From the IMG/VR virus record IMGVR_UViG_3300027749_002876, positions 62,001 to 126,000 of that record: DNA of 64,000 nt; one strand, given 5' to 3'. The notes below the pieces were generated by a model. It was given only the letters and a program-made list of their open reading frames with translations. It was not told the origin of the DNA and did not search any database. Shown here one piece after another: positions 19,792 through 63,925 of this stretch. The position numbers and the translations under genes are program-made. Numbering within the stretch: position 1 is the first letter of the stretch; the number at the start of each line of letters is the position of its first letter.

Positions 19792-20115
19792 TTATAGGCT
19801 CAAAGATTTCTTATTTGGCATAACTTTAAAATGTGTGCCTGTACCAACCACACAACTTAAATCACCCTTAGTAGCAATTATAGTCCAATTACCATCTATA
19901 GGGTTGACCCAAAGAGACATCGTAGATTTGGCAACATCGTCTGCTTTGCCTATTAAAATCGGAGACTCTTTATAATTTTTCTTTAGTGTATTAAATAATA
20001 CAATAGTATTGTAACATGGCAATTCAATATTTACAATCTCTTCGGACACAATAGATTCTTCAGCGTATGCTAATGAAACTAAAAGTGCCATTAGTAGGGT
20101 AATAATTGTTTTCAT
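19792..20115 (-). CDS. Secreted hypothetical protein
   Basis: Signal peptide; WTII...SCVVGTG. Confidence 0.7.
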   Translation of the reverse strand: MKTIITLLMALLVSLAYAEESIVSEEIVNIELPCYNTIVLFNTLKKNYKESPILIGKADDVAKSTMSLWVNPIDGNWTIIATKGDLSCVVGTGTHFKVMPNKKSLSL

Positions 20116-20179
20116 TAGTTATTTATATTATGGAATTTATCTACATAGTTTTACACCCATATTTCTAAATAAATACCAT

Positions 20180-20950
20180 ATGAAAACATATCGTTCTATT
20201 TTTGTGAGTGATGTACATTTGGGTACCAAAGATAGTCAGGCTGATAAGTTAAATAATTTTTTAAAACACAATAGTTGTGACACACTGTATTTGGTAGGTG
20301 ATATTATAGATGCGTGGCGTATACAACAAAACAGGTGGCGATGGAAACAAAGCCATACCAATGTGGTTCGTAGAGTATTAGGTCATGCCAAACGTGGCAC
20401 TAGAGTTGTTTATATAGCAGGTAATCATGATGAGTTTCTTAGGCCAATGATTCCATATGGATTCAGTTTTGGTCTAGTAGAGATTCATAATCAAATAGAA
20501 CACATAGGTGCAGATGGCAAACATTATCTAGTAACCCACGGGGACTTGTTTGATGGTATCACAAGACTAGCACCGTGGATAGCATTTTTAGGAGACAAAG
20601 CATATGATATCATTTTATCGCTCAATAGTAGGTTCAATTGGATACGTCATCGTTTTGGTTTTGGGTACTTTAGTCTTAGTAAATATCTTAAATCAAAAGT
20701 AAAAAAAGCAGTAGATTTTATTTTTCATTTTGAAAAGAACCTAGCTGCCTATTGTAAAAAGCGAGGGTTTGATGGTGTAATATGTGGTCACATACACCAA
20801 GCAGAAATCAAATACATTGATGGGATTCGATATATGAACGACGGTGATTGGGTAGAATCCTGTACGGCACTAGTAGAACATCATGATGGCAAGTGGGAAA
20901 TAATTACATGGACTAAACAAAATGACAAAAACGATATTGATAATCACTGA
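20180..20950 (+). CDS. PlcP-like phospholipase C (LpxH/COG2908 metallophosphoesterase family)
   Basis: YRSIFVSDVHLG, YLVGDIID.W, GNHDEFLR, THGD.FD, ICGHIH, NDGDWVESCTALVE. Confidence 0.85.
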   Translation: MKTYRSIFVSDVHLGTKDSQADKLNNFLKHNSCDTLYLVGDIIDAWRIQQNRWRWKQSHTNVVRRVLGHAKRGTRVVYIAGNHDEFLRPMIPYGFSFGLVEIHNQIEHIGADGKHYLVTHGDLFDGITRLAPWIAFLGDKAYDIILSLNSRFNWIRHRFGFGYFSLSKYLKSKVKKAVDFIFHFEKNLAAYCKKRGFDGVICGHIHQAEIKYIDGIRYMNDGDWVESCTALVEHHDGKWEIITWTKQNDKNDIDNH

Positions 20951-21941
20951 TAACTTACCGGAGCAAATAAATGGCGTGGTCACGACCTACACGAATATTG
21001 AGACATGTGCGGTTTTGGATGGTTATAAGTTTGTGGTGTTGCATCCCGGGTGGTTCAGCTACATTGATTGTCCTAGCTACAACGAAGTCAAGATTGCCTA
21101 TCCAAGGAACTTGGGCCAGAAGGTTAAGGAGATCGATCCGGATTATATCCATATCGCCACAGAAGGTCCTCTTGGTCTGTGGGGTAGAAAGTATCTGTCA
21201 CTATGTAATATTAGGCACAATACCGCTTATCATACTAAATTTCCTGAGGGTTTAAAGAAACTATTTGGCATACCTGAAAGTCTCACTTGGGTATTTGTTC
21301 GTTGGTTTCATAAGCACAGCGGTAAAGTATTGACTACTACAGACTCAATGGTTCAAGAATTACGTAAGCATGGATTCACCGGTGAAGTTGTTTCTTGGAC
21401 TAGAGGTGTTGACAGAACAATATTTGATCCATCTCTTAGAGAAGAATTACCTAGCAAGTATTTGCTATGTGTTAGTCGTGTTAGCAAAGAAAAAAACCTA
21501 GAAGATTTTTTTAAATTAGATTATTTCGGGTATCAAAAGATCATGGTAGGTGATGGCCCCATGTTAGAGACCTACAAAAAGAAATACCCAGATGTACACT
21601 TTACTGGATTTAAAACAGGAGTAGATTTAGCTAGGTATTATGCTAATGCTGATGTGTTTGTGTTTCCTAGTCGTTGGGAAACATTTGGTTTAGTAATGAT
21701 TGAATCAATGGCGTGTGGTACCCCTGTCGCGGCTTATCCTTGTCAAGGCCCCGTAGATGTTATAGATGAAGGTGTTACTGGTTGTATGAACAATAATTTA
21801 AAACAGGCTGTGACTGATGCATTAGCGTTAAAAAGAGAAGTAGTACTGAGTGGGAGCAACAGATGGACTTGGCAAAAGGCATGGGAAATATTTAGAGATA
21901 ATCTAGTCCCTGTCACATCATTGTCACATAATATGCGTTAA
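20922..21941 (+). CDS. GT4 glycosyltransferase (Agt-like diacylglycerol glycosyltransferase)
   Basis: TD..P.Q.NGVV.T, HIATEGPLG, YHTKFPE, RVSKEKN, FPS..ETFGLV..ESMACGTPV. Confidence 0.85.
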   Translation: MTKTILIITDNLPEQINGVVTTYTNIETCAVLDGYKFVVLHPGWFSYIDCPSYNEVKIAYPRNLGQKVKEIDPDYIHIATEGPLGLWGRKYLSLCNIRHNTAYHTKFPEGLKKLFGIPESLTWVFVRWFHKHSGKVLTTTDSMVQELRKHGFTGEVVSWTRGVDRTIFDPSLREELPSKYLLCVSRVSKEKNLEDFFKLDYFGYQKIMVGDGPMLETYKKKYPDVHFTGFKTGVDLARYYANADVFVFPSRWETFGLVMIESMACGTPVAAYPCQGPVDVIDEGVTGCMNNNLKQAVTDALALKREVVLSGSNRWTWQKAWEIFRDNLVPVTSLSHNMR

Positions 21942-21991
21942 ATAATTATGTGCCATGGTGGCACACAATTAACACCCACAAGGAGAAACAC

Positions 21992-22645
21992 ATGAGATTA
22001 GATGACTTAGCCGTAAGATTAGTAGCAGTAGAAGCCAAATTAGCATCACTAACTGGAACATCAGTTAACACAGACAATGCAAAAAACATTGATGAACTAG
22101 ACGCAAGACTATCAGTAGTTGAAGCACAAATCGATCAGTTAGTAGCTGTAAAAACTCAAGAGCATGTTGACGCTATTGTTGCCGCAGCCGCACAAGCAGT
22201 TGAAAGCATACAAGCCGCAGTTGCAGAAGTAGTTGCACTTTCTCCAAGTGCTGACCACGCAGAAGCCGCTGACATCGTTACTGACGTTGTTACAGCACAA
22301 GCAGAAGCAGATGCAGTTGATCACCCAGAAGTTGCTGACATTATTTCAGCCGCAGTTCAAGCAGTTGTTGCCGCAGAGCCAGAAGTTGTTACAGATCCAG
22401 TAGCAATCACAGCCGCTATCATGGAAGCAGTTGCTGAAATGCCAGCTCCGGCCCCAGAAGTTGCAGAAGAAGTTGCAGCCGCAGTTGCTGAAGTTATTGC
22501 AGCCGCAACAGGTGAAGAAGTTGCTCCAGAAATACACGCTGACATCGTTGAAGCAGTTGCAGCTCCTTCAAATCAAGCACTAGATGATATCGAAGCACGT
22601 TTGGAAGTTGCAGAAGCTAAAGTTGATACATTATTAGGAAAATAA
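21992..22645 (+). CDS. Very acidic Ala/Val/Glu-rich protein with three coiled-coil motifs
   Basis: AGGAG SD before ATG at 21992; LD(D/E)(L/I)..RL...EA repeats. Confidence 0.75.
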   Translation: MRLDDLAVRLVAVEAKLASLTGTSVNTDNAKNIDELDARLSVVEAQIDQLVAVKTQEHVDAIVAAAAQAVESIQAAVAEVVALSPSADHAEAADIVTDVVTAQAEADAVDHPEVADIISAAVQAVVAAEPEVVTDPVAITAAIMEAVAEMPAPAPEVAEEVAAAVAEVIAAATGEEVAPEIHADIVEAVAAPSNQALDDIEARLEVAEAKVDTLLGK

Positions 22646-22685
22646 TAGCTAGCATTTGATGTTGGTTTTCAACCTTTTTTAAATC

Positions 22686-22752
22686 GGGCACAAGATAGAG
22701 TGCCGCTGGATTCTCGTAACCAGTACTAAGGGTTCGGTAGGGCTCTTTTTTA
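22686..22752 (+). ncRNA. Candidate structured RNA: two hairpins plus a terminator
   Basis: GGCAC/GTGCC, GCTGG/CCAGT, then AGGGTTC-GGTA-GGGCTCT and a T-tract. Confidence 0.5.
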
Positions 22753-22802
22753 TTGGATAGTAGTAAGACAATTTACCTACTACCTAGCATAAATACAATA
22801 CT

Positions 22803-23621
22803 ATGAAAAAACTACTACTATTATTATTTGTATTTATTAGTTCAGTTGTCAACGCACAATTACCAACTAGTAATGTACCGCTACCCGCTGATATTGCCGC
22901 AATTAAGAAAGCAAACGTTCTTATTGTAGCAATGACCAAAAAAGATAACCCTCCCTTCTTCAGTGGTAGCGAGGATGATATCCATGGTCTTGACGTTGAA
23001 ATTGCACGAAGAATTGGAGTAATGCTTGGAGTTCCTGTACAGTTTAGACGAGATGCAGAAAGTTTTGCAGAAGTTGTAGAACAAGTTCGAGACGGGCGTG
23101 CCGATGTTGCAGTTAGCAAATTATCTGTAACCGGCCCTAGATTGCAAGTAGTTAGATTCAGTGATCCTTACATCAAACTAAGACAAAGTTTAGTTATCAA
23201 TCGATTATGGCTAAGCCAAAATAGTCAAGGTCGTGAAGTATATCAAGTCATTAGAAATTTCAATGGTAAAATAAGTTTCATTCGCAACTCAAGCTATGAC
23301 ACATTTGCACGTACTAATTTCCCTAATGCCACGTTTCTTCCGGAAGATAAATGGGATGTGATTATTGACAAAGTTACACGTGGTGATATTGCAGCCGCTT
23401 ATCGTGATGAATTTGAGATTAAGAAAATTGCTTTTGAAAAACCAGAAGCCGCAATCAGTACAAAGAGTATCACAATCAGTGACAGCGTGGATAACATTGC
23501 TGTTGCGGTAAATCCTAAATCATTACAATTGTTAAGTATTATTAATTATGTTATTAAAAATGAATACAACAATATTGACACTAAGAAGTTGATGGACCGC
23601 TACAAAGCTGAAAAGAAATAA
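22803..23621 (+). CDS. Amino-acid ABC-type periplasmic binding protein (SBP family 3)
   Basis: Signal peptide; PPF, GLDVEIA..I...LGV, D.A.S.LS.T..R...V.FS.PY. Confidence 0.9.
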   Translation: MKKLLLLLFVFISSVVNAQLPTSNVPLPADIAAIKKANVLIVAMTKKDNPPFFSGSEDDIHGLDVEIARRIGVMLGVPVQFRRDAESFAEVVEQVRDGRADVAVSKLSVTGPRLQVVRFSDPYIKLRQSLVINRLWLSQNSQGREVYQVIRNFNGKISFIRNSSYDTFARTNFPNATFLPEDKWDVIIDKVTRGDIAAAYRDEFEIKKIAFEKPEAAISTKSITISDSVDNIAVAVNPKSLQLLSIINYVIKNEYNNIDTKKLMDRYKAEKK

Positions 23622-25564: not shown

Positions 25565-26290
25565 ATGAAAAAATTAGGTGTATTGGGCGGAATGGGTCCT
25601 GCAGCCAGTGCTGAATTTATAGTTAGACTAATTCAACAAACACCTGCTAGCAAAGACCAAGATCATATTCCGTTTGTTCTTTGGAACAATCCACAAATCC
25701 CCGACCGTAGCACCAGCATGAGAAACGGTGATGACAAACCATTACCTTACTTGATAGAAGGTATACAGGCATTAAAATATTCAGGTTGCGATTTAATTGT
25801 TATACCTTGCAATACAGCACACTTTTGGTATCATGAATTAAGTAGATTGAATGTGAAAATTATTCACATTGTGGATAGTGTTGCTGACGCATTAAGTGAA
25901 ATAGATGTTACTAATACTACTATAGGGGTAATGGGTACACAAGCTACAGTTGAGTTTGGATTATATCAATACATGTTGAACAAGTCAGGATGGAATTGTA
26001 TCACCCCTACAAAAGAGGAAATGGATACATTAGTACAACCAGCTATTGATTTAATTAAAAGTGGCAATATTTCACAAGCACAACTCATGTTAATGACAGT
26101 AATAAACAGTTTGATTGATAGAGGTGCCAAAGCAGTGGTATTGGGTTGTACAGAAATACCATTGGCAATAAAGCAGACTGAAGAAAATGGTATACCTATC
26201 ATCAATAGTATTGATAGTTTGGTTAAGATAGCAATCAGGAATTTTAACCCAATGTATTTGAATAGTCATGTCGATTGTGATATAATCTAG
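25565..26290 (+). CDS. Aspartate/glutamate racemase
   Basis: LGVLGGMGP.AS, PDR, PCNTAH, LGCTEIP (two catalytic Cys). Confidence 0.93.
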   Translation: MKKLGVLGGMGPAASAEFIVRLIQQTPASKDQDHIPFVLWNNPQIPDRSTSMRNGDDKPLPYLIEGIQALKYSGCDLIVIPCNTAHFWYHELSRLNVKIIHIVDSVADALSEIDVTNTTIGVMGTQATVEFGLYQYMLNKSGWNCITPTKEEMDTLVQPAIDLIKSGNISQAQLMLMTVINSLIDRGAKAVVLGCTEIPLAIKQTEENGIPIINSIDSLVKIAIRNFNPMYLNSHVDCDII

Positions 26291-26292
26291 GA

Positions 26293-26838
26293 ATGAAGAT
26301 AAAAGAAATCAAATCAAAAATGCCCCATCTATATCTAGATATGGATGGCGTACAAGCCGACTTCTTTGGAGCTTGGGCCGCAATGCATAATGTTGGTAAT
26401 TACAAAGAAATCCCTGATACTGAAACATCTATTAATCAATTAGCCTCAAGTAGCCCTCTAGAAGTTTATAATTTTTTTAGAGAACTAAAACCTCTAGAAG
26501 GTGGAAATAGAGTGGTACAATGGTTGAATCAGAATAACATTCCATATACTGTGTTAAGTGCTCCTTTACGAGGCCCATATGCTAGTGCTAGCGTAGAGGC
26601 TAAAAAAGATTGGTTAGACGAACATAATCCTAGTGCTACTCAAAACGCTATCTTTACACAACACAAACACAAATATGCACTAAAAAATGGTGAGCCAAAT
26701 GTCTTAGTAGATGATTATGGCAAGTATTTAAATCTTTGGAGTAATGCAGGTGGTATTGCTGTAAAACATGAAGATAGTAATACACAATATACTATCGATG
26801 AGTTAGAAAAGATTTACTCACCTTACATAAACAGATAA
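26293..26838 (+). CDS. HAD-family 5'(3')-deoxyribonucleotidase
   Basis: DMDGVQADF, LSAP, K..W, LVDD. Confidence 0.85.
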   Translation: MKIKEIKSKMPHLYLDMDGVQADFFGAWAAMHNVGNYKEIPDTETSINQLASSSPLEVYNFFRELKPLEGGNRVVQWLNQNNIPYTVLSAPLRGPYASASVEAKKDWLDEHNPSATQNAIFTQHKHKYALKNGEPNVLVDDYGKYLNLWSNAGGIAVKHEDSNTQYTIDELEKIYSPYINR

Positions 26839-27903: not shown

Positions 27904-27924
27904 TAGGAGAAAATAGAAACACAT

Positions 27925-28140
27925 ATGGCTAAAGAAGAAGGTATTAAGATGGACGGTAAGGTAATAGATGTATTACCTAATGCTGTTTTTAGGGTAACGT
28001 TACATAGTGGTCAAACTGTCAACGGTTACATCTCGGGTAAAATGCGGCAACATGATATTAAAATTCTATTAGGTGACACAGTAGAAGTTGAATTTAGTCC
28101 ATATGATTTGACAAAAGGTCGTATTGTTAGGAGACGATAA
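27925..28140 (+). CDS. infA: Translation initiation factor IF-1
   Basis: MAKEE.I..DG.V.DVLPNA.FRV.L...ISGKMR...[22 protein letters not shown]. Confidence 0.97.
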
Positions 28141-28907
28141 TGTTATCATTTAATAATGATTTTTTAGGGTATCATCCACTAGCACATAATGTAGATTTTT
28201 CAGGCAATGATAGTGAGGAATTGTACCAAAAAAATTTAAAGATACAATCAAATGACTGGTATTATAGAAATAATAAAGTTTCCTATGTCCGTAATAGTAA
28301 TGGACATAGATGCAAAGACCTAGAAGATATTGACCTAAACAACTACATATTGTTTACGGGGTGTAGTCATACTGAAGGTATCGGGTTAGAATTAGAAAAA
28401 ACTTATCCTTACTTAGTAAGTAAAGAATTAAATTGCGACTATTATAATCTTGCCATTGGTGGTAGTGGTATTGATACATTAAGTTATAATTTAATTACAT
28501 GGTTTTCTACTATAAAGAAAAAACCAAAATTTTTAGTATTACAATGGACTCATCATAATAGATTTATAACAGTCAAAGATAAAAACAAAAATACCTATGA
28601 GGTTTGTGGACCATGGTCAACTGATGATGACAAAAAAAACATGTTAATATACGGTGCCGAAAACGGTTTTTTTGAAACCAAAAGAAATATGACACATACC
28701 TTATTAAAAAATCTTATTGATTGTCCTATAATTGAAATAGCAAATTTAAATGCAAAATTCAATGATGATACAATAATATTAGATCCTATTAAAGAAGATT
28801 ATGCAAGAGATAAACTACATTTTGGAATTCTTTCTAATCTAAAATATGCAAGTATTATAACTGCTAGAATAAAAGATAAATATAATCATGAACTTAACTA
28901 TAACTGA
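28140..28907 (+). CDS. SGNH-like hypothetical protein
   Basis: GCSHTEG, NLA.GGSG, ARD..H.G. Confidence 0.65.
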   Translation: MLSFNNDFLGYHPLAHNVDFSGNDSEELYQKNLKIQSNDWYYRNNKVSYVRNSNGHRCKDLEDIDLNNYILFTGCSHTEGIGLELEKTYPYLVSKELNCDYYNLAIGGSGIDTLSYNLITWFSTIKKKPKFLVLQWTHHNRFITVKDKNKNTYEVCGPWSTDDDKKNMLIYGAENGFFETKRNMTHTLLKNLIDCPIIEIANLNAKFNDDTIILDPIKEDYARDKLHFGILSNLKYASIITARIKDKYNHELNYN

Positions 28908-29230: not shown

Positions 29231-29268
29231 TTTAGTCCTTTTCTGATAAATACAGAATAAGGACTAAA
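29231..29268 (+). promoter_or_regulatory. Late promoter in the loop of an SD-sequestering hairpin
   Basis: TTTAGTCCTTTTCTG-ATAAATA-CAGAA(T)AAGGACTAAA. Confidence 0.8.
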
Positions 29269-29269
29269 A

Positions 29270-30397
29270 ATGACTATAGGAAACTTAGAAGTAATCGATA
29301 TTGGCTTAGCCAACGAGTCTACGGGCAGTGATTCACTTTACTTAGCATTTAACAAAACAAAAAACAACTTTGCAGTATTAGCAAATACCGCCAGTCAGTA
29401 CGTCAATTTTACAGGAAATACTGGTATAGGAGTAAATGCTAACGCCACAACGGGCACAGTTTACATAACAAATACTGGTGTTAACAGTTTAACTGCAGGA
29501 GATAGCAGTATTATTTTAACAGAACCTACCCCGGGTAATATATCAATTGTTGCTTCAGGTGTGGGTAACGGCGGTAGTGGTACAGTAACTAGTGTAGGAG
29601 TTACTTCGTCTACACTGACTATTAGTAATAGCCCTATTGTTAGTTCCGGAAATATTACATTAAATCTAACATCAATAAGTCCCACACTTGCAGGGACATA
29701 TACATACCCAACCGTAACAGTTGATCAATTTGGTAGGGTTACTACAATAGCAAACGCCGCTAGTGTAGGTACTGTAACTAGCGTAGGCATTGCCCCAGGG
29801 GCAGGTATTTCTGTTACAAATAGCCCTATTACTGCATCCGGAGACATTACAGTAATTAATACGGGTGTCACAAGAGTTAGTGCAGGATCAGGAATTCAAG
29901 TAAGTAGTGGTAATGGCAATGTTACTATTTCAACAACCCCGGTGGCGGCTGTTACTTCAGTGTCACTAGCAAGTTCGTCATTAACAGTAACCGGTAGTCC
30001 AATTACAGGATCGGGAACAATCACAGTTGAGTTACCTAGTGCAATAACTATTGCAGGTAATCTAACTGCAGGTAATATTTTATCAAATGGTAGAATGGTA
30101 CTCAATGGTAGTGAAGATTTGGCAGCATCGGCAGCGGCAAATCTATTAGTTACAGCAAGTTATTTCACAACAGTATCCGCTGAGACAGCTACATTGGCAG
30201 CCGGAGTTGACGGTCAAATTAAAACTTTTATGATGGTTGCTGACGGTGGTGATATGGTTATCACTGTCGCTAATGCAGGTTGGAAAAGTTCGGGTACAGG
30301 AACTATAACATTCAATGACATGGGTGATGGTTGCACTCTACAATATATTACAAACAAATGGTTTTGCGTTGGCAACAATGGAGTAACTTTTGCATAA
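29270..30397 (+). CDS. Virion structural/fibre-like protein
   Basis: IDIG.....GSDSL..AF.K.. N-terminus; repeated GTVTSV...SPI..SG.I; TVDQFGRVT. Confidence 0.7.
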   Translation: MTIGNLEVIDIGLANESTGSDSLYLAFNKTKNNFAVLANTASQYVNFTGNTGIGVNANATTGTVYITNTGVNSLTAGDSSIILTEPTPGNISIVASGVGNGGSGTVTSVGVTSSTLTISNSPIVSSGNITLNLTSISPTLAGTYTYPTVTVDQFGRVTTIANAASVGTVTSVGIAPGAGISVTNSPITASGDITVINTGVTRVSAGSGIQVSSGNGNVTISTTPVAAVTSVSLASSSLTVTGSPITGSGTITVELPSAITIAGNLTAGNILSNGRMVLNGSEDLAASAAANLLVTASYFTTVSAETATLAAGVDGQIKTFMMVADGGDMVITVANAGWKSSGTGTITFNDMGDGCTLQYITNKWFCVGNNGVTFA

Positions 30398-37360: not shown

Positions 37361-37516
37361 TCAAATTTCGGTGCGATTTGGATGTTTAGATTTACGTTGA
37401 TAGCCCGTTTTGGGCTTAGCAACCTTAGGTTTAAACGGGGTGTTCTCACAGAAAAGAACACGGTGAGCCCTGTGTTTGGGTTCTTTAACAGTGAAGGATA
37501 GTATTTCTCTTTTCAT
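37361..37516 (-). CDS. Small basic protein, probably leaderless
   Basis: PFKPKV..K..YQRK.KH; ATG 7 nt after TATAAT. Confidence 0.6.
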   Translation of the reverse strand: MKREILSFTVKEPKHRAHRVLFCENTPFKPKVAKPKTGYQRKSKHPNRTEI

Positions 37517-37548
37517 AACCCATATTATAGCATGAGTCTTATTTATTG

Positions 37549-38877
37549 TCAACCTAAATTTTTAAGTTCTGTACTGATGGATTCTAGCACATTGTCCCAT
37601 GTTCCATTTGTCTGACGGAATAGTCTCATGCAATCATAGAATGGGCTATCGTTACGATTCATAAACCAACGCCAATCACACCCGTAATCAGTTAACATCA
37701 CCCAAGTGGGAACTCCCATTGCACCACTCAGGTGAGGGATAACTGTATCAATTGATATCACCAAATCTAGTTGGCTAATTAATCCTGCTGTATTGTAAAA
37801 GCCAGTTAAGTTTTCATGGAATGTTTTGACATTATACTTTGCTAATGTCTCCAATATTTGTTCATCCACTTCATATGATAGACTAATAAATTCATAATCA
37901 TCATTTGTTATTGATAATAATTGTTCTAATTCAATTCTACGGAAGCGTGATATGAATGCAATCTTATTTGGACTAGACAATAATCCAATTCGTTTTTTAG
38001 TCTTGGGGCCTAACAATTGTTTCCACAACTGTTTCATACCTTCATCTACATCTAAATAAGGAGTAGAATAAGGGATCGTATCAATGGTTGTACTAAAACA
38101 TTTTGGTATATCCATCAATGCAACATGATAGTGATATGGTGGTATCTGTGCGTCAGCATTTAGTACAGTCAAGTCAGGCAAGTTATATTTAAACAAATCA
38201 TACAATTGTGGTTTGGTTATAACTGTTACTTCTGCACCCTTGTCTTTTAATTGTTTTGCAAAACGAATAAATTGAACACTATCACCAAATCCCTGTTCAT
38301 AGTATACGAGAACTTTCTTACCTATAATATCTTGTGATCCATCATATTCTGGCCCGGGCAAGTTAGGCTTAAGGCTTATGTCGCTTTGATAATACCAACG
38401 TGCTTCATACTTCTTCCAACCTTCAATCAAATCACCTTTCATTAAATGACTAACTGATTCGTTTAACTCATAGTTAACATTATTAGGAGTGAGACCTTGT
38501 GCTATTTGTAAAAAAGGAATAGCAAGTTCAGGTAATCCAAACTCACGCAAGGTGTTGCCGTAATTACTGTATGCTGTTGAATGTTTGGGGTCGAGAGCAA
38601 AGGTGTGTGCAAATGTAATTAATGCTTCCCTATAATGTCCCAAACTGCGTAATGCTGTTCCTCTACTTAGCCAACTTTCAACATAGTTATGACTGCATGG
38701 TAATTCAAAGCATTCTAATGCTTCTACATCTCTACCTAACTGTGATAGTGTAATGCCAAGATTATGCCACACTATATAATTCTGTGGCTCTTGTTCTAAA
38801 AATCTTCTGTAACATTCACTGGCTTCGTGATACTCTTTAGCCATGTAGTGAATGTTACCTTGTTCAAAGTCGTTCAT
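37549..38877 (-). CDS. TPR-repeat glycosyltransferase (GT9-like C-terminus)
   Basis: TPRs; EGW..YE.RW, EQGFGD..QF.RF, TA.LI..LDLVISIDT...HL.GA.G.PTW, W.W..R.DSP.Y..RLFRQ. Confidence 0.9.
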   Translation of the reverse strand: MNDFEQGNIHYMAKEYHEASECYRRFLEQEPQNYIVWHNLGITLSQLGRDVEALECFELPCSHNYVESWLSRGTALRSLGHYREALITFAHTFALDPKHSTAYSNYGNTLREFGLPELAIPFLQIAQGLTPNNVNYELNESVSHLMKGDLIEGWKKYEARWYYQSDISLKPNLPGPEYDGSQDIIGKKVLVYYEQGFGDSVQFIRFAKQLKDKGAEVTVITKPQLYDLFKYNLPDLTVLNADAQIPPYHYHVALMDIPKCFSTTIDTIPYSTPYLDVDEGMKQLWKQLLGPKTKKRIGLLSSPNKIAFISRFRRIELEQLLSITNDDYEFISLSYEVDEQILETLAKYNVKTFHENLTGFYNTAGLISQLDLVISIDTVIPHLSGAMGVPTWVMLTDYGCDWRWFMNRNDSPFYDCMRLFRQTNGTWDNVLESISTELKNLG

Positions 38878-39484: not shown

Positions 39485-39771
39485 TATGTCATCATCCTTA
39501 TTAATCCTATACTATCAATGGACACTAGCAGTAGATAGTTAGCCAGCATGCCAAAAGATTTCCTAGTCCAACTAGCCCAAGCATACAAAGCACAACCAGT
39601 AATCCAAATGGGATAAAGAGCAAGAAGCGGAGGAGTGGGGACTGTAACCGCCATAGTAATACTGCATCCAATACTAATAGCCCATGCAAGAAGCTCAATA
39701 GCAAAGCGAATTCTGTTAGACTTAAAGTCATCTTTTATCCACGAAAAAATACCATAAAAAATATCGTTCAT
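39484..39771 (-). CDS. Membrane protein, probably leaderless
   Basis: Three hydrophobic segments; ATG 6 nt after TATAAT. Confidence 0.7.
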   Translation of the reverse strand: MNDIFYGIFSWIKDDFKSNRIRFAIELLAWAISIGCSITMAVTVPTPPLLALYPIWITGCALYAWASWTRKSFGMLANYLLLVSIDSIGLIRMMT

Positions 39772-39816
39772 ACGTGTATTATAACATAATGAACGATATT
39801 GTACAAGTTACTTTGG

Positions 39817-40908: not shown

Positions 40909-40942
40909 ATCGTTATTTATGAGTCCTCTGAGATATTGCTAA

Positions 40943-41647: not shown

Positions 41648-41684
41648 AAGTGTATTATATACCCAAATTGATTTATTGTCAACC

Positions 41685-41909: not shown

Positions 41910-41915
41910 AGATGA

Positions 41916-42795: not shown

Positions 42796-42860
42796 GGTGT
42801 TCTCTTTTGTGTATTTATACTATATCGTAAATATACGAGTATTTAGTTTACCCACTAAAT

Positions 42861-43754
42861 ATGAGTATGTCAGAAATATTGCAATGGTCTACTGGATTAA
42901 ATGGGTACAAAAAACATACCCTGCATGATAATCATTTTACTACAGAATTAACAGAATGTCAATTTGAACCGGGTAGAAGTGTGGATGATATATTCTATGA
43001 CCATTTAGTAGATTGCCCAAATAGTCCAATTGAGTTACTCTATAGCGGCGGATTGGATAGTGAACTGGTTCTTATGTCTTTATTAAAAAATAAGATACCA
43101 GTAGAAGCAATGACTATGGTTATTACTATTAAAGGTGCAATATTGAATGTAGTGGATCTGTATTACTCAGAAAAGTTTTGTAGGGAAAATAATGTCAAAC
43201 AGAATTTATTCTACTTTGATGCTATTGACTTTTATGAGAGCGGTAAGTATTTAGAGTATGCTCTGCCATTTAAAATAACAGAACCGCATGTTCCTAGTCA
43301 TTTTTGGTTAATAGAACAATGTCATAACTACCCAATCGTTGGTGGTGATTGGCCCTGGCTACAAGCAGAGAAAAATGTGTTGAGTCCATTTAAATTGGCA
43401 TTCAGTAGTTATGAACGATTCATGCAATCAAAGAGTATACCCGGTATAGGCAACATGATAAGTCACAGCTTTGAATCTAGTTATCATTTCATTGAACAGC
43501 ATTTAAAAGAACATAAGAGGGGTAATGATAAATTTCATACAGTGCCTTTCTTAAAGTACAAGATGTATGGTACAAAGGAACCTAGAATAAAAAGTTATGG
43601 TTGGGAACAATGTCCTAGAGAACTTTTTAACATTACTAAATATCAAATTGAATTATTAAAAAAACTTGGTGTCCCAAAGTCTAATATAGTTTGGGGCAAT
43701 CAAGTTGCAACTTTAATTAACTCAACTGTAACATCTAATAATCTTTTTATATGA
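42861..43754 (+). CDS. PP-loop (adenine nucleotide alpha-hydrolase-like) protein
   Basis: LLYSGGLDSE. Confidence 0.7.
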   Translation: MSMSEILQWSTGLNGYKKHTLHDNHFTTELTECQFEPGRSVDDIFYDHLVDCPNSPIELLYSGGLDSELVLMSLLKNKIPVEAMTMVITIKGAILNVVDLYYSEKFCRENNVKQNLFYFDAIDFYESGKYLEYALPFKITEPHVPSHFWLIEQCHNYPIVGGDWPWLQAEKNVLSPFKLAFSSYERFMQSKSIPGIGNMISHSFESSYHFIEQHLKEHKRGNDKFHTVPFLKYKMYGTKEPRIKSYGWEQCPRELFNITKYQIELLKKLGVPKSNIVWGNQVATLINSTVTSNNLFI

Positions 43755-45510: not shown

Positions 45511-46392
45511 TTATTTCTTCGCTACTGATTTTACAATGTTTCTAATTTCTTCTGTTGTATAAAACATAGGGCCCGATGACATTGATTCTAATCTGTTCAA
45601 TACATCAATATCCTTGTTGCATTCGTATATTGAATTTACTAACATACTTCTTGCTTCTTTACTAGCAGAAGGGTTTACACTTAACAGAATACCCAAAGGC
45701 ATTTTACTCAATTTTTTACTAAAAGTTTGTACGCTTTCGTGATTGTACTTGTTTGCTGTTCGTTTGTCAAACGTACTGGCAATGATTTTGACCTTTCCTG
45801 ATTCAATCATTGGCTTCGCTCCAATGTATGTGTCTAGTAGGATATCCAAACTACCATTCACTGTATCAGTTAACATGTTGACATTGTTTTTATAAGGTAT
45901 AACTTGATACGGGATGTTCAACTCAGTAAACAATGTCTCAATCATAAAGTTACCTAACACTGTGCTTGAACCTGCATTGATTGGTCTAGTCTTTGATAGT
46001 GTTCTCAACTCATCAATTGTATCAGTCTTGCCTGTCTTACCTACAAACACCATTGCAATTTGATTCATGTATACAGTTGGATTAATATCTTCTAGTAAGT
46101 CAATATTAGGAAAGCTACCCAACATGTTCAGCCCAAAATTTCCCACTAACAAGTTAGTAACCTTGTCAGTATCTTTTGCTTGCTGTAATGTGTTGATTGC
46201 TATTAAACCATTTGCACCCGGTTTGAATTCTTTTAATACATTAATCTTTTGACGTTCTAAACAACCAGTATAGGTATCCACAACTATATCAGATCCTGAT
46301 CCGGGTCCAGAACTTAGTATGAATTTATACGTGTGTATTTGAGCGTGTGCAATACCAAATAATAGTAAAAATAATGCTAATAGTTTTTTCAT
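45511..46392 (-). CDS. Bug/TctC-family periplasmic binding protein
   Basis: Signal peptide; PGSGSD, KPGANG.IA, IPYK, G.VK.IA. Confidence 0.75.
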   Translation of the reverse strand: MKKLLALFLLLFGIAHAQIHTYKFILSSGPGSGSDIVVDTYTGCLERQKINVLKEFKPGANGLIAINTLQQAKDTDKVTNLLVGNFGLNMLGSFPNIDLLEDINPTVYMNQIAMVFVGKTGKTDTIDELRTLSKTRPINAGSSTVLGNFMIETLFTELNIPYQVIPYKNNVNMLTDTVNGSLDILLDTYIGAKPMIESGKVKIIASTFDKRTANKYNHESVQTFSKKLSKMPLGILLSVNPSASKEARSMLVNSIYECNKDIDVLNRLESMSSGPMFYTTEEIRNIVKSVAKK

Positions 46393-46406
46393 TCAACTAT
46401 TTATAT

Positions 46407-52682: not shown

Positions 52683-53249
52683 TTAGTCAACCTTGGGCAA
52701 GGGTGCTATAATTTTATGTAACCAGTGATTGTATATATTGACGTTTAATGGAGTGTCTATCCATTGCTGTAATTTTTCTATTAGATTACCTTCTAATATA
52801 TCTTTAAAGAGTATGACTTTACGAATATGGCCATATTTTTTAGCAAATTTAACTCTTTGAATTCGTCTAGCGAGTTCTGTTTCATTAAATGGAGGATGAG
52901 ATTTAGGAAGAATTATATGACTCCGTTCCATACACCATTTGGCATATTTATAATCAGAGTCATCAATTAAAATAGTATCTATTATATGTTGTAATCCAAA
53001 ATCAAAATAATGACTACAGGTAATTGCTGTGTATTTTTTTTCTATTTCTTCTAAATATGGAGTTTTTCTAGAACCAGAATATAATACATTTTCTGCACCA
53101 TTATTTTTAATAATAGCCAACTTAAAGTGTAATCTTAATGTATTAGGCCTAGCCCGCACATCAATATTGGTTAAATCATAATCTTTACTATCTATTACTG
53201 CGGCTAACATATCTCCTGCCGCACCAGGATTATATAATACTTGATACAT
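52683..53249 (-). CDS. Hypothetical protein (P-loop/sulfotransferase-like N-terminus)
   Basis: VLYNPGAAGD; ATAAATA-4-ATG. Confidence 0.6.
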   Translation of the reverse strand: MYQVLYNPGAAGDMLAAVIDSKDYDLTNIDVRARPNTLRLHFKLAIIKNNGAENVLYSGSRKTPYLEEIEKKYTAITCSHYFDFGLQHIIDTILIDDSDYKYAKWCMERSHIILPKSHPPFNETELARRIQRVKFAKKYGHIRKVILFKDILEGNLIEKLQQWIDTPLNVNIYNHWLHKIIAPLPKVD

Positions 53250-53265
53250 AATGTATTTATCTAGG

Positions 53266-54210: not shown

Positions 54211-54864
54211 TTACTCTAAAAATAATAGGTTGTTATTTTTAAATACATCTCTCCAGTATCCTGTGTTAGGTATCAGAGCCCATAATTTAGTATTTTCAAA
54301 AACTATCAATGTTCTATTTTTTTTTGTTTGATTTAATGCGACCGCAACCCCATTAAACCAGGGATGAAAATCATCTCCTAGTAATAATCCGGTATCGGAT
54401 TCATACTTTTCAATATCATGTTTAACATCCAATAATGTATGTGAAGCATCAATAAAGGTAAGATCGTAATGTTTTACTTTCTCAAAATCTTTGCTAGAAG
54501 TAGGGTGTACATTTATATTAGCATACATTTCTTCACCTATACAAAATCTAAATGCATCATGCCATCCTGTAGCTTTTGCAATTTCTCTTGCATCAGCATA
54601 CATAATAGGATCGCCTAGTGCAAATTGCAAATTTTCAAACTCAATATTTAATAATGATTGGCTAGAAACAATTCTAAAATTATCAACTATATCCATGCTT
54701 ACAGAAGAATTTTTACCTCTATAGAGGGCAGTAGTAGAACTACCCAAAAAACAACCTATTTCTAAAATAGAACCATTATCAGGAACATAACCAGCCAATG
54801 TTGAAAGAATTATTAATTCTTTTTCGAGCATCCAACCCGGAATGTTTACATTGTATTTTTGCAT
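54211..54864 (-). CDS. Class I SAM methyltransferase
   Basis: PGWM, LEIGC..GSST, FIDASH, GDD. Confidence 0.85.
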   Translation of the reverse strand: MQKYNVNIPGWMLEKELIILSTLAGYVPDNGSILEIGCFLGSSTTALYRGKNSSVSMDIVDNFRIVSSQSLLNIEFENLQFALGDPIMYADAREIAKATGWHDAFRFCIGEEMYANINVHPTSSKDFEKVKHYDLTFIDASHTLLDVKHDIEKYESDTGLLLGDDFHPWFNGVAVALNQTKKNRTLIVFENTKLWALIPNTGYWRDVFKNNNLLFLE

Positions 54865-54884
54865 ATTGTATTTATGTTTATATT

Positions 54885-55503: not shown

Positions 55504-55577
55504 TGGATGCGGGTGACAGATTCGAACTGCCGATGCACCTGGCTTATGAGACCGGTGTGGTGACCACCCAACCCGCG
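55504..55577 (-). tRNA. Atypical initiator-like tRNA(CAT)
   Basis: CGCGGG 5' end, C1:A72 mismatch, truncated D-arm. Confidence 0.7.
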
Positions 55578-56690: not shown

Positions 56691-57227
56691 CTAAGCCGTG
56701 TTATATATTGCTAGATCACCATAGCGTTTTAAACTACACTCTATCAATTGTTTATGTTTTTCTACATCCAAGAAACCTTTAATATAAAGTGTTTCTCTCA
56801 TAAAATCTTCCTTTACTCTATGCAAACATGCGGTAAGATTAAGCAGGTATGCTATGGGCACTTGAGGCAATATAGGAGTTATCCATTCTTTGCCATTAAA
56901 TATTTCAAGCGAGTCGCATTTACCTTTTAATACTACATGATACCCAGCCGGTTCAGCTTGTGCAATGTGTTTATATTCATTAGATAAATTATCACCGGGA
57001 TAATAATCATGGTGAGGATTAACTACTATTTGTTGAAACTTATGCGTAAATGTTGTGATATCTATTATTGGTATTTGATCTAATAAACTTCTATATTGTT
57101 GATAGTTATTTTCTTTACCAAGAACTTCTTTTGTTTCCCAAAAATTTTGATGATAGGTATGTTGATCACCTAACTCAAAACTAGTTTCAGTAACGTCTAT
57201 ATCTAGTGGAACAAATAATAATTTCAT
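56691..57227 (-). CDS. Oxygenase/cupin-like hypothetical protein
   Basis: PHHD, EP.GY, H.V...R; TTAAATA-4-ATG. Confidence 0.6.
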   Translation of the reverse strand: MKLLFVPLDIDVTETSFELGDQHTYHQNFWETKEVLGKENNYQQYRSLLDQIPIIDITTFTHKFQQIVVNPHHDYYPGDNLSNEYKHIAQAEPAGYHVVLKGKCDSLEIFNGKEWITPILPQVPIAYLLNLTACLHRVKEDFMRETLYIKGFLDVEKHKQLIECSLKRYGDLAIYNTA

Positions 57228-57244
57228 CTAGTATTTAATAACAT

Positions 57245-57318: not shown

Positions 57319-57330
57319 ATAAATATATTT

Positions 57331-58320: not shown

Positions 58321-58860
58321 CTATTTTTTCCACCACCAAACCAATCGTTCAACTGTTGGAAAATTTTTATTGATATCTAAAACAATTGGTTTACAAACTG
58401 ATAAGTTCAACTTATTAGTCCATTCATAAAATGTTTTATAACTTAATCTATGTTTAGTACCAAAATTAGATATATGATCTTCATTATGACCTATATAATC
58501 TAAAAATGGTTGCATTCTTACTACAATATATCCACCGGGCTTGATCCAACTTACAATTTTTTCTACATCATAGAATTGATTTTCTACGGGTTTATATTGT
58601 ATGGAACCTAAACAAAGTGCGATATCTATTGATTCTTTTTCAAAGACGACATCATTTACTGAAGCCTGCATATCACTATTTGGATATGGATCAGCGTCAA
58701 AGCCAATCAAATTATGTATTTTGTCCTTGAAAAGATTTTCCCCACATCCCACATCAATTACTTTTTGCGGAAATAAGGAATTTACCTCTTCAATTAAATT
58801 GTAACCTGAATATGTGAATCCACGCATTCTAGTATCATTGTAAATATAAGCTTCATTCAT
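58321..58860 (-). CDS. Class I SAM methyltransferase (paralogue of the C-terminal part of 50287-51015)
   Basis: SG..L.EEVN...P.KVIDVGCG.N.FK..I.NLIG.D, CLGSI. Confidence 0.8.
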   Translation of the reverse strand: MNEAYIYNDTRMRGFTYSGYNLIEEVNSLFPQKVIDVGCGENLFKDKIHNLIGFDADPYPNSDMQASVNDVVFEKESIDIALCLGSIQYKPVENQFYDVEKIVSWIKPGGYIVVRMQPFLDYIGHNEDHISNFGTKHRLSYKTFYEWTNKLNLSVCKPIVLDINKNFPTVERLVWWWKK

Positions 58861-58875
58861 GAAGATATTTATCGA

Positions 58876-62911: not shown

Positions 62912-62986
62912 TGGTGGATGTAAGTAGATTTGAACTACTGACCTATTCCGTATGAAGGAATTGCACTACCGCTGTGCTATACATCC
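62912..62986 (-). tRNA. tRNA(CAT), probably elongator Met
   Basis: Cloverleaf; loop UUCAUAC. Confidence 0.85.
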
Positions 62987-62988
62987 AT

Positions 62989-63064
62989 TGGGGTGAAGGA
63001 CGAGACTTGAACTCGCAACAACTGGAATCACAATCCAGGGCTCTACCATTGAGCTACCGACACC
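62989..63064 (-). tRNA. tRNA-His(GTG)
   Basis: G-1:C73; two acceptor-stem mismatches. Confidence 0.85.
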
Positions 63065-63070
63065 ATATGT

Positions 63071-63157
63071 TGGAGGAAGATAACAGAATCGAACTGTCAC
63101 CGTGTAAACAGTGGGACGGTTTTCAAGACCGTGTCCGCGCCATGCAGCCTATCTTCC
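63071..63157 (-). tRNA. Atypical tRNA-Ser(TGA), possible 8/4 fold
   Basis: GGAAGAUA/UAUCUUCC acceptor, long variable arm, no U8. Confidence 0.8.
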
Positions 63158-63159
63158 TA

Positions 63160-63345
63160 TTATGCTTTTTTATCTACTTGATGATTACTATGTGTAGGTT
63201 CTAATTTACCTACTTTATCATATAGATACTGTACAACTTCTAAGTATTGTTTATTAGTTGCAGGATCTTGTAATGTTTTATAAACTGTTGTACGATATTG
63301 ATGATTGGTAATATCGTTTACCGCTGATATAGTTTGAATTATCAT
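63160..63345 (-). CDS. Small hypothetical protein
   Basis: ATAAATA upstream. Confidence 0.55.
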   Translation of the reverse strand: MIIQTISAVNDITNHQYRTTVYKTLQDPATNKQYLEVVQYLYDKVGKLEPTHSNHQVDKKA

Positions 63346-63373
63346 AATGTATGTATTTATTAATAAATACAGT

Positions 63374-63925
63374 ATGATACTCACAACAACTCCAATTAAG
63401 CAACATACTCAGTTAGTACATTTAGATATGCCATACACATATGAAGAAGTTTTAAATGAGCTAAACACATATGAGTTTAATGAAATTCATCCTTATCGTT
63501 ATAATTCTGCAATAACCACCAAAATTCTTAGTGAAATAAGACAACTAATAGTTGACTACTCTTTTATAGATAAATTTTATGAAATAAAAGATTTTCAAAA
63601 GTTGTGGAATAATGTATCTAAGGAAGAACTTAAAAAAAAATGTAAGTTCGATTGTTCTTTACATCTTGATAAACCTAAATTTTCTCTTACACCCCACCTT
63701 GATAGTAGACAAATTGTAATAGTTGGGATGATTTTCTTGAACCCAGTGAATGATATTAAACAAAACTCTGTACTATATGATACAGAAAATATGCTGAATC
63801 CACAATATGTACCTTCATCATTTGGAGAAGGATGGGTTATGGCTAATGCACATAACACATGGCACTCAGGTGGAAACTCATCTGACTATGATAGATATAG
63901 TATATTGTTCACCTATACCATATAG
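63374..63925 (+). CDS. Fe(II)/2OG oxygenase-like protein
   Basis: PHLD...WHSG...R; ATAAATA-4-ATG. Confidence 0.7.
   Translation: MILTTTPIKQHTQLVHLDMPYTYEEVLNELNTYEFNEIHPYRYNSAITTKILSEIRQLIVDYSFIDKFYEIKDFQKLWNNVSKEELKKKCKFDCSLHLDKPKFSLTPHLDSRQIVIVGMIFLNPVNDIKQNSVLYDTENMLNPQYVPSSFGEGWVMANAHNTWHSGGNSSDYDRYSILFTYTI

What the first reader, a model, noticed from the sequence alone, without database searches (positions are those of the whole stretch)
20110..63376. Widespread leaderless-looking genes from both promoter classes
Seen: TATAAT followed 6-7 nt later by ATG with no SD at 26293, 37516, 39771, 41647 and 41909. TAAATA followed 4-7 nt later by ATG at 20115, 20180, 22803, 28888, 40908, 46392, 53249, 54864, 57227, 58860 and 63374. 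Inference: many mRNAs start at or next to the AUG, while the cassette genes have strong SDs. With phage-encoded IF-1, bS21 and an odd initiator-like tRNA, this suggests the phage manipulates the balance between leadered and leaderless initiation.
Basis: partly seen in the sequence, partly recalled or inferred. Interest (0 to 1): 0.6.

Follow-up and report, generated by a model that had tools for sequence, protein, structure and literature searches.

The report
Promoters fused directly to start codons
In this 525-kb freshwater T4-like giant phage, about one gene in ten has a promoter box placed so that transcription should begin exactly at the ATG, which would give mRNAs with no ribosome-binding leader; T4 itself does not show this layout, and no transcript start has been mapped here.

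Summary
All 16 listed sites exist. Genome-wide, TAAATA lies 4-5 nt before the ATG of 51 gene starts (8.5% of genes, against 0.11% of internal ATGs). The TAAATA-to-start distance is bimodal. One peak is at N4-5. N9-15 is almost empty. A second peak at N16-27 consists almost entirely of genes with a Shine-Dalgarno (SD) site.

TAAATA is the core of the T4 late promoter TATAAATA. The phage encodes a gp55-type late sigma factor and a gp23 capsid protein.

Consensus host-type promoters (TTGACA-N17-TATAAT) show the same split. One mode has the ATG 6 nt after the -10 box. The other has a stereotyped 27-34 nt leader with an SD.

In both classes the A of ATG sits at the canonical +1. Paralogs and IMG/VR orthologs keep the spacing while the spacer sequence drifts. 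One gene even switches promoter class and stays leaderless-spaced. T4 and four cultured jumbo relatives show no such excess.

No transcription start sites (TSS) could be mapped, so "leaderless" remains a strong inference.

The phage-encoded IF-1, bS21 and odd tRNA-Met genes all exist, but nothing here shows that they tune leaderless versus leadered initiation.

This is a new variant of known kinds: T4 late promoters, lambda cI, and the leaderless transcripts of Thermus phages.

The parts
20113..20125 (-). Late box TAAATA-N4-ATG. Starts gene 19792-20115 (107 aa). It is divergent from the next entry across a 64-bp gap.
20170..20182 (+). Late box TAAATA-N4-ATG. Starts gene 20180-20950 (256 aa, metallophosphoesterase-like).
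   Evidence: The paralog at genome 184973 keeps the same layout.
22790..22805 (+). Late box ATAAATA-N7-ATG. Starts gene 22803-23621 (272 aa). A 1-2 nt leader is expected.
   Evidence: The paralog at genome 282759 is identical in layout.
26258..26295 (+). Host-type promoter TTGAAT-N17-(TG)aTATAAT-N6-ATG. Starts gene 26293-26838 (181 aa, NT5C 5'-nucleotidase).
   Evidence: Orthologs carry either this layout or ATAAATA-N5-ATG.
28877..28890 (+). Late box ATAAATA-N5-ATG. Starts gene 28888-29220 (110 aa, phrog_17776).
   Evidence: About 12 of 32 orthologs keep a box at N4-7; the rest have no box.
37514..37552 (-). Host-type promoter TTGACA-N17-TATAAT-N7-ATG. Starts a 51-aa ORF (37364-37516).
   Evidence: The paralog at genome 435461 has TTGACA-N18-TATAAT-N7-ATG.
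39769..39806 (-). Host-type promoter (TTGTAC or TGTACA as -35) with TATAAT-N6-ATG. Starts gene 39484-39771 (95 aa).
   Evidence: The paralog at genome 432859 has N5. One 151-nt piece from an RNA library lies inside the gene.
40906..40919 (-). Late box ATAAATA-N5-ATG. Starts gene 40681-40908 (75 aa).
   Evidence: A gene start at genome 431741, also 75 aa, has ATAAATA-N5-ATG; the paralog screen did not pair the two.
41645..41682 (-). Host-type promoter TTGACA-N17-TATAAT-N6-ATG. Starts gene 41309-41647 (112 aa, GIY-YIG).
   Evidence: The paralog at genome 430361 is 90% identical with a different spacer.
41907..41944 (-). Host-type promoter TTGACA-N17-(TG)TATAAT-N6-ATG. Starts a 74-aa ORF (41685-41909).
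42856..42869 (+). Late box TAAATA-N5-ATG. Starts gene 42867-43754 (295 aa).
   Evidence: The paralog at genome 429405 keeps N5 at 48% identity.
46390..46403 (-). Late box TATAAATA-N5-ATG. Starts gene 45511-46392 (293 aa).
53247..53259 (-). Late box ATAAATA-N4-ATG. Starts gene 52683-53249 (188 aa).
54862..54874 (-). Late box ATAAATA-N4-ATG. Starts gene 54211-54864 (217 aa), just downstream of tRNA-Gly.
57225..57237 (-). Late box TTAAATA-N4-ATG. Starts gene 56691-57227 (178 aa).
58858..58871 (-). Late box ATAAATA-N5-ATG. Starts gene 58321-58860 (179 aa).
63364..63376 (+). Late box ATAAATA-N4-ATG. Starts gene 63374-63925 (183 aa).
29231..29272 (+). Leadered counterpart. The late box ATAAATA sits in the loop of a hairpin whose 3' arm holds the SD (AAGGA) of gene 29270-30397, at N18-19 from the ATG.
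   Evidence: The SD is at least 4/5 paired in 26 of 29 orthologs, and an RNA starting 5 nt after the box is unfolded.
27925..28140 (+). Phage IF-1 gene (71 aa), with an SD-like AGGAG 15 nt upstream.
1729..1944 (+). Phage bS21 gene (71 aa), with a late box ATAAATA 37 nt upstream.
55504..55577 (-). Odd tRNA-Met(CAU) with a C1xA72 mismatch, a 3-bp D stem and a C.A mismatch in the anticodon stem.

Best explanation
Proposed mechanism: the phage runs a T4-style temporal programme with two promoter types.
- Early genes use near-consensus host sigma70 promoters (TTGACA-N17-TATAAT).
- Late genes use the box (A)TAAATA with no -35 element. It is read by host RNA polymerase carrying the phage's gp55-type sigma factor.

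Each promoter type comes in two designs.
- In the leadered design, a short leader carries an SD. For late genes the box lies 16-27 nt before the start. For early genes there is a stereotyped 27-34 nt leader.
- In the leaderless design, the box lies 4-5 nt (late) or 6 nt (early) before an ATG. This puts the A of ATG at the canonical +1, so the mRNA should begin with 5'-AUG and be translated by the SD-independent leaderless route.

Likely benefit (inferred): an ATG without an SD is read only when it is the 5' end of the RNA. Such genes would therefore be translated only from their own promoter and not from read-through transcripts. The SD-sequestering hairpin around the leadered late promoter of gene 29270 would achieve the same gating.

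What is shown and what is inferred:
- Shown: the motifs, their spacing, their conservation, and the sigma factor gene.
- Inferred: the start sites, the timing, and the mode of translation.
For: 1. Spacing. The TAAATA-to-start distance is bimodal: N4 = 22, N5 = 29, almost nothing at N9-15, then about 70 at N16-27, nearly all with an SD. Distance from full sigma70 promoters to ATG peaks at N6 and at N31-34.
2. Enrichment. The motif is about 80-fold enriched at gene starts over internal ATGs. It is the top hexamer at that position, 51 against 2.3 expected. Shuffles and the reversed-pattern control agree.
3. Identity of the box. Only ATAAATA is conserved and there is no -35 element. The genome encodes a gp55-type sigma (phrog_12791 E 1e-72; match to T4 gp55). 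It lies next to a gp47-like gene. The genome also encodes a gp23 capsid protein.
4. Independent support for a TSS about 5-6 nt after the box. The conserved hairpin at gene 29270 has its SD-bearing 3' arm beginning there. Two tRNA genes begin 7 nt after TAAATA, and two begin 8 nt after a sigma70 -10 box.
5. Conservation. In 9 of 10 paralog pairs with a late leaderless-spaced member, both members keep the layout at 48-96% identity, with different spacers. IMG/VR relatives show the same bimodal histogram. Orthologs of gene 26293 carry either TATAAT-N6-ATG or ATAAATA-N5-ATG.
6. No hidden SD starts. Only 6 of 51 genes have a downstream in-frame start with an SD, which is the background rate. Ortholog alignments begin at residue 1.
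7. Position. Only 4 of 51 use the TAA of the box as the upstream stop codon, and 34 of 51 lie more than 30 nt from an upstream same-strand gene.
8. The genes are real. They include a 5'-3' exonuclease, a PP-loop ATPase, an NT5C nucleotidase, a GIY-YIG protein and a protein with an M48 peptidase domain.
Against: - No TSS or ribosome data exist. The only RNA library holding this phage gives six read-length pieces with no information on ends.
- gp33 and the gp45 clamp were not found by sequence.
- With N4 spacing, RNA polymerase must start one base earlier than the T4 rule, or the AUG is lost.
- The major capsid and other core structural genes are SD-led, so leaderless genes are not the bulk of late expression.
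- 17 of 51 lie close behind another gene and could also be translated from read-through RNA by coupling.
- The host is unknown, so its capacity for leaderless translation is unknown.
- My gene calls are home-made, and a few 'early leaderless' calls are false; for example genome 277341 is an SD misread as a -10 box.
Confidence: 0.72

Rival explanations
1. TAAATA next to the ATG is not a promoter. It is an A/U-rich, SD-independent translation signal, such as an S1-binding or Kozak-like context, acting on internal start codons of longer transcripts.
For: The box is A/U-rich and sits where a ribosome contacts mRNA. 17 of 51 such genes lie within about 40 nt of an upstream same-strand gene. 144 further genes have no SD at all, so SD-independent initiation must exist in this system.
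Against: - The same heptamer occurs 16-27 nt upstream of SD-led genes, with an empty zone between the two modes.
- It occurs in the loop of a conserved SD-sequestering hairpin.
- It occurs 7 nt before tRNA genes.
- It equals the T4 late-promoter core, and a gp55 sigma is encoded.
- Orthologs of gene 26293 replace it with a full sigma70 promoter at the equivalent +1 spacing.
Confidence: 0.08
2. The boxes are promoters, but transcripts start a few bases away from the A, or the real start codons lie elsewhere. The mRNAs would then have very short leaders or different N-termini rather than a true 5'-AUG.
For: Spacings of N4, N6 and N7 occur beside N5. TSS choice by RNA polymerase varies by +/-1-2 nt. 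15 of 51 genes have an upstream in-frame start codon.
Against: - Leaders of 0-3 nt behave as leaderless in practice; a published dRNA-seq study defines leaderless as a leader under 10 nt (PMC8244752).
- There is no excess of downstream SD-led starts.
- Ortholog and paralog alignments begin at this ATG.
- The peak is sharp at the canonical +1 in both classes.
Confidence: 0.12
3. One reading: the phage-encoded IF-1, bS21 and initiator-like tRNA actively shift host ribosomes between leadered and leaderless initiation during infection.
For: All three kinds of gene are present. IF-1 and bS21 are each present in two copies. Both bS21 copies carry a late box. Both initiation modes coexist in one genome.
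Against: - There is no functional evidence here.
- In E. coli it is ribosomes lacking bS21 and uS2 that favour leaderless lambda cI mRNA (PMC10491246), so extra bS21 would be expected to help SD-led genes.
- Leaderless genes occur in both the early and the late class, so a one-way temporal switch is not obvious.
Confidence: 0.12
4. The pattern is a chance by-product of an A+T-rich genome.
For: G+C content is 37%, and TATAAT-N6-ATG alone is not significant within the window.
Against: Shuffles, the reversed-pattern control, spacing histograms, the internal-ATG control and conservation in relatives all reject chance.
Confidence: 0.01

Closest known systems
T4 late promoters (TATAAATA, gp55 with gp33 and the gp45 clamp)
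   Same: The box is the same (ATAAATA) and there is no -35 element. A gp55-type sigma is encoded next to a gp47-like gene. Some late promoters sit inside hairpins that hide the SD in read-through RNA, as known for T4 lysozyme (the T4 case is from my own knowledge)..
   Different: In T4 the box lies 21-29 nt before the ATG, and there is no N4-5 class (150 kb scanned). Here about 45% of start-proximal late boxes are at N4-7, and the leadered ones are shorter (N16-27). gp33 and gp45 were not detected. The sigma is 301 aa against 185 aa in T4.
Lambda cI mRNA from pRM, the classical leaderless phage mRNA
   Same: A sigma70 promoter whose +1 is the A of the AUG, with no SD (PMC10491246). The early class here has the same geometry, TATAAT-N6-ATG.
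   Different: Lambda has one regulatory gene of this kind. Here roughly a dozen or more early genes, including enzymes, and about 50-60 late genes use the layout, and a second, phage-specific promoter type does so too.
Thermus phages phiYS40 and Lalka27a
   Same: These are phages whose transcripts start with the A or G of the initiator codon, including late promoters with a phage-specific -10 element (bioRxiv 10.64898/2026.04.20.719267).
   Different: There, most transcripts are leaderless, and the host phylum itself uses -10 boxes next to ORFs widely (PMC12340547). Here the share is about 10-12% of genes, alongside a strong SD-using majority. The promoter type is T4-like. The carried bS21 argues, indirectly, against a host from the phyla whose control genomes lack it (Thermus, Deinococcus and Corynebacterium).
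Cultured jumbo relatives by capsid protein (PA5oct, Phosso, Vibrio phage 2.275.O, slurp01/PBECO4 group)
   Same: The gp23-type capsid protein is 62-67% identical, and these are jumbo myoviruses.
   Different: None has an excess of ATAAATA-N4-5-ATG: 9, 0, 0 and 1 matches against 6, 0, 0 and 2 for the reversed pattern. Their late boxes may differ, so this is only a partial control.

Membership tests
T4-type (gp55-dependent) late promoter | Conserved TATAAATA-like box | tested here: met
   ATAAATA is the only conserved block in 52 aligned sites.
T4-type (gp55-dependent) late promoter | No -35 element | tested here: met
   Information content is about 0 from -40 to -3 relative to the box.
T4-type (gp55-dependent) late promoter | Phage encodes a gp55-family sigma factor | tested here: met
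   Genome 341198-342103 matches phrog_12791 at E 1e-72 and phrog_234 at 2e-20. T4 gp55 matches at 4e-5.
T4-type (gp55-dependent) late promoter | gp33 co-activator and gp45 sliding clamp | tested here: inconclusive
   There is no match to PF02916 or to T4 gp33. Both proteins are small and diverge fast.
T4-type (gp55-dependent) late promoter | Transcription starts about 6 nt after the box, late in infection | not testable with these tools
   Only assembled contigs of RNA libraries were available. Indirect support comes from the hairpin and from tRNA positions.
Sigma70 promoter | -35 TTGACA, 17 +/- 1 bp spacer, -10 TATAAT | tested here: met
   Many sites are perfect or near-perfect, and many have an extended-10 TG.
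Leaderless mRNA | [quoted passage not shown] | not testable with these tools
   No TSS data. The geometry puts the A of ATG at the canonical +1 in both classes.
Leaderless mRNA | No SD upstream | tested here: met
   The promoter box fills the positions where an SD would lie. There is no excess of alternative SD-led starts.
Leaderless mRNA | AUG start codon | tested here: inconclusive
   The classifier admitted only ATG into the leaderless classes, so their all-ATG count is by construction. Independently, TAAATA-N4/5 precedes ATG at 52 candidate gene starts against 5 for GTG and 5 for TTG. SD-led genes are also 94% ATG, so the feature discriminates weakly.
Leaderless mRNA | That ATG is the true start of the protein | tested here: inconclusive
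   Ortholog and paralog alignments start at residue 1. No peptide data.
Thermus-phage-type 'mostly leaderless' strategy | The majority of phage transcripts are leaderless | tested here: not met
   About 78 of 597 genes (13%) are leaderless-spaced, 280 have clear SDs, and capsid genes are SD-led.

The most novel reading that the evidence does not exclude
Leaderless layout as a programmed translational gate in a large clade of freshwater giant T4-like phages. Genes would be translated only when their own early or late promoter fires, because the SD-less AUG is read only at a 5' end. The phage's own late-expressed bS21, its IF-1 and its C1xA72 tRNA-Met would retune host ribosomes so that both SD-led and 5'-AUG mRNAs are served at the right time.
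Probability: 0.12. Interest if true: 0.8.

Novelty: new variant of a known kind. Interest (0 to 1): 0.58.

Why it matters
- Gene finders and annotators that expect an SD will misplace these starts.
- The layout gives a clean, testable case of leaderless initiation used at scale in a phage whose many SD-led genes point to an SD-using host. It involves two different sigma factors.
- It suggests a simple way to tie translation to promoter firing in densely packed genomes.
- The clade is common in lakes: 451 IMG/VR contigs encode a relative of the sigma factor (tblastn E <= 1e-3), and the best 80 are 85-100% identical.
- The phage also carries ribosomal and initiation-factor genes, so it is a natural system for asking whether phages retune initiation.

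Tried and rejected
- RNA evidence. One metatranscriptome (X17) holds six 151-nt pieces that are 100% identical to the window, but they are contigs without end or strand information. They show no TSS.
- DNA and protein searches with the 1207-aa ORF against cultured phages found nothing. PHROGs and Pfam were blank for most large proteins.
- RNAalifold gave no consensus fold for the promoter hairpin, because the register differs between variants. Single-sequence folds did show it.
- Host assignment through bS21 failed. The best matches (55-59% identity) are short contigs binned to Chitinophagales and Polynucleobacter MAGs and may themselves be phage. The rest scatter over many phyla.
- gp33 and the gp45 clamp were not found.
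- A at +4, proposed as a recognition cue for leaderless mRNA, shows only a weak trend: 63% in the late class and 78% in the early class, against 51% in SD-led genes.
- Start-codon usage does not discriminate.
- The idea that the TAA of the box is the stop codon of an upstream gene (reinitiation) fits only 4 of 51 cases.
- Literature searches for leaderless together with T4-like late promoters, TATAAATA or gp55 found no prior description. The phiYS40 paper itself is not held.
- Complex prediction, structure prediction and the large protein searches were not used. No claim here rests on them.

Full report
**What the sequence is.**
The window is bases 62001-126000 of a single 524,565-bp viral contig with 36.7% G+C. 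The contig encodes:
- a gp23-type major capsid protein (PF07068, E 4e-99);
- a tail sheath and a family-B DNA polymerase;
- 56 tRNAs in two inverted arrays;
- two copies each of IF-1 and bS21.

By capsid protein its nearest cultured relatives are jumbo myoviruses, at 62-67% identity: Vibrio phage 2.275.O, Sinorhizobium phage Phosso, Pseudomonas phage PA5oct and the PBECO4/slurp01 group. It occurs in freshwater and lake metagenomes from 13 studies. In IMG/VR, 451 contigs encode a relative of its late sigma factor (tblastn E <= 1e-3), and the best 80 are 85-100% identical.

**Checking the observation.**
All 16 sites are as described. In the window, TAAATA-N4-5-ATG occurs 19 times against 5.4 +/- 2.3 in dinucleotide shuffles, and no shuffle in 100 reaches 19. 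Across the genome:
- ATAAATA is followed by ATG after 4 nt 24 times and after 5 nt 31 times, against about 4 at other spacings.
- The reversed-pattern control gives 8 against 55.
- With a home-made gene set of 597 ORFs, 51 gene starts carry TAAATA at N4-5, against 9 of 8439 internal ATGs.
- TAAATA is the most enriched hexamer at that position, 51 against 2.3 expected.

TATAAT-N6-ATG alone is weak in the window (5 against 2.2). Genome-wide, however, 17 gene starts have it at N6, against 0-5 at neighbouring spacings. Many of these have a perfect TTGACA at 17 bp and an extended-10 TG.

**What the TAAATA box is.**
Aligning 52 sites shows conservation only of (A)TAAATA, with nothing at -35. This is the core of the T4 late promoter TATAAATA. 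The genome encodes a gp55-family late sigma factor at 341198-342103 (phrog_12791 E 1e-72; match to T4 gp55). It sits beside a gp47/SbcD-like nuclease, near where the two genes lie in T4. gp33 and the gp45 clamp were not detected.

**The key result: two designs per promoter class.**
The distance from TAAATA to the start codon is bimodal:
- N4 = 22 and N5 = 29, with N6-7 adding 10;
- almost nothing at N9-15;
- about 70 at N16-27, nearly all with an SD.

A leader too short to hold an SD is avoided, so genes have either no leader or a minimal SD-bearing one.

Full sigma70-type promoters show the same split. There is a peak at N6 (23 sites, 15 of them gene starts). A second peak at N31-34 comes from at least 22 stereotyped cassettes with the leader AGAATCTTAAACAGTAAAGAAAAGGA.

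From established knowledge, T4 late transcripts start about 6 nt after the box and sigma70 transcripts about 7 nt after the -10 hexamer. In both classes the short spacing therefore puts the A of ATG at +1.

**Independent support for the start position.**
- In front of gene 29270, the late box lies in the loop of a hairpin whose 3' arm contains the SD. In 26 of 29 orthologs the SD is at least 4/5 paired in a read-through RNA. An RNA starting 5 nt after the box is unstructured.
- The stem sequence differs between lineages (AGTCC/GGACT against GATCC/GGATC) yet still pairs.
- This is the T4 lysozyme-type device, and it only makes sense if transcription starts just after the box.
- Two tRNA genes begin 7 nt after TAAATA, and two begin 8 nt after a sigma70 -10 box. 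The spacing rule therefore does not depend on translation.

**Conservation.**
- In 9 of 10 paralog pairs with a late leaderless-spaced member, both members keep the layout at 48-96% identity, with different spacer sequences. Four early pairs do the same.
- IMG/VR loci homologous to the window (45-80% protein identity) repeat the bimodal histogram.
- Loci around the sigma gene, a different part of the genome, show only the leadered late mode plus a TATAAT-N6 peak.
- About 12 of 32 orthologs of gene 28888 keep a late box (mostly ATAAATA) at N4-7 before the ATG; the others have no box.
- Orthologs of gene 26293 carry either TTGGCT-N17-TATAAT-N6-ATG or ATAAATA-N5-ATG. The promoter class was exchanged, but the leaderless spacing was kept.

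**Controls.**
- T4 (150 kb scanned) has its TATAAATA-to-ATG peak at N21-29 and nothing at N4-5.
- PA5oct, Phosso, Vibrio phage 2.275.O and slurp01 have no excess of the pattern.
- Only 6 of 51 late leaderless-spaced genes have a downstream in-frame start with an SD, which is the background rate.
- Only 4 of 51 use the TAA of the box as an upstream stop codon.

**What the genes are.**
- Early class: a 5'-3' exonuclease, a PP-loop ATPase, an NT5C nucleotidase and a GIY-YIG protein.
- Late class: mostly unknown proteins, a protein with an M48 peptidase domain, and, at N6, a gp5-like baseplate hub.
- The capsid and its neighbours are SD-led.

Leaderless genes are therefore a sizeable minority: about 13% of genes, and about 45% of genes that have a late box within 30 nt.

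**Limits.**
- No TSS could be mapped. The one true RNA library that holds this phage gives six read-length fragments inside genes.
- The gene set is my own, and a few early calls are false.
- The host is unknown. A carried bS21 argues against hosts of phyla that lack it, but that is indirect.

IF-1, bS21 and a tRNA-Met with the initiator-like C1xA72 mismatch exist, and bS21 has a late box. Nothing connects them with leaderless initiation. Published cryo-EM work indicates that ribosomes lacking bS21 and uS2 favour leaderless lambda cI mRNA (PMC10491246). The expected direction of any effect is therefore unclear.

**Comparison with what is known.**
Leaderless phage mRNAs are known in three settings:
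- lambda cI;
- Thermus phages phiYS40 and Lalka27a, where most transcripts start at the initiator codon;
- the Deinococcus-Thermus phylum itself, which uses -10 boxes next to ORFs (PMC12340547).

Searches for leaderless together with T4-like late promoters, TATAAATA or gp55 found no earlier description. I rate this a new variant of known kinds.

Noticed in passing
Genome about 40-127 kb against about 410-492 kb (the window covers most of the left arm): There are two diverged, inverted paralogous arms with 137 paralog pairs whose N-termini align. Each arm carries a tRNA array (31 and 25 genes), an IF-1 gene and a bS21 gene. It could be a true inverted duplication or, less likely, a chimeric assembly of two strains.
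   Followed up: partly
Window 29231-29272 (+): The late box ATAAATA lies in the loop of a hairpin that pairs with the SD of gene 29270. It is conserved with compensatory changes in 26 of 29 orthologs. It resembles the T4 lysozyme/soc device, in which only late transcripts expose the ribosome-binding site.
   Followed up: yes
Window 10.4-12.9 kb (+) and 36.1-37.3 kb (-); at least 22 copies in the genome: These are stereotyped early cassettes. Each has TTGACAATAAAT..N..TATAAT followed by a conserved 27-34 nt leader, AGAATCTTA(A/G)ACAGTAAAGAAAAGGA, before a short gene. The role of the conserved leader is unknown.
   Followed up: partly
Window 54968-55055 and 57245-57331 (-); genome 425268 and 122969-123043: These tRNA genes begin 7 nt after a TAAATA box or 8 nt after a sigma70 -10 box, so the tRNAs would have almost no 5' leader.
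   Followed up: partly
Window 27900-27927 and 1680-1731; genome 448514 and 472110: The IF-1 and bS21 genes have a GGAG 14-16 nt before the ATG, an unusually long spacing for an SD. It is kept in the IF-1 genes of relatives. Both bS21 copies have ATAAATA 37 nt upstream.
   Followed up: partly
Window 55504-55577 (-): This tRNA-Met(CAU) has a C1xA72 mismatch (initiator-like), a 3-bp D stem and a C.A mismatch in the anticodon stem. It lacks the three G-C pairs of bacterial initiators. A second tRNA-Met that also begins CGCGGGG lies at genome 425501-425575; its fold was not examined.
   Followed up: partly
Window 26258-26295 and loci L115-L176: Orthologs of one nucleotidase gene alternate between a sigma70-type and a T4-late-type promoter. 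This implies that its expression time was switched during evolution.
   Followed up: yes
Genome 511508-512101 (-) and window 57889-57965 (-): An early, leaderless-spaced PP-loop ATPase gene (PF01171, the family that includes lysidine synthetase) occurs alongside a phage tRNA with anticodon CAU that looks like tRNA-Ile2.
   Followed up: no
Genome 341198-342103 (+) = L029:937-1839: The gp55 homolog is 301 aa against 185 aa in T4. It has an insertion of about 120 aa between the conserved N-terminal and C-terminal blocks.
   Followed up: no
For example genome 62530, 88846, 345272, 449631 and 473309: The variant box ATAAGTA lies 4-5 nt before the ATG at 7 gene starts (0.43 expected). It may be a weaker or differently timed form of the late box.
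   Followed up: partly
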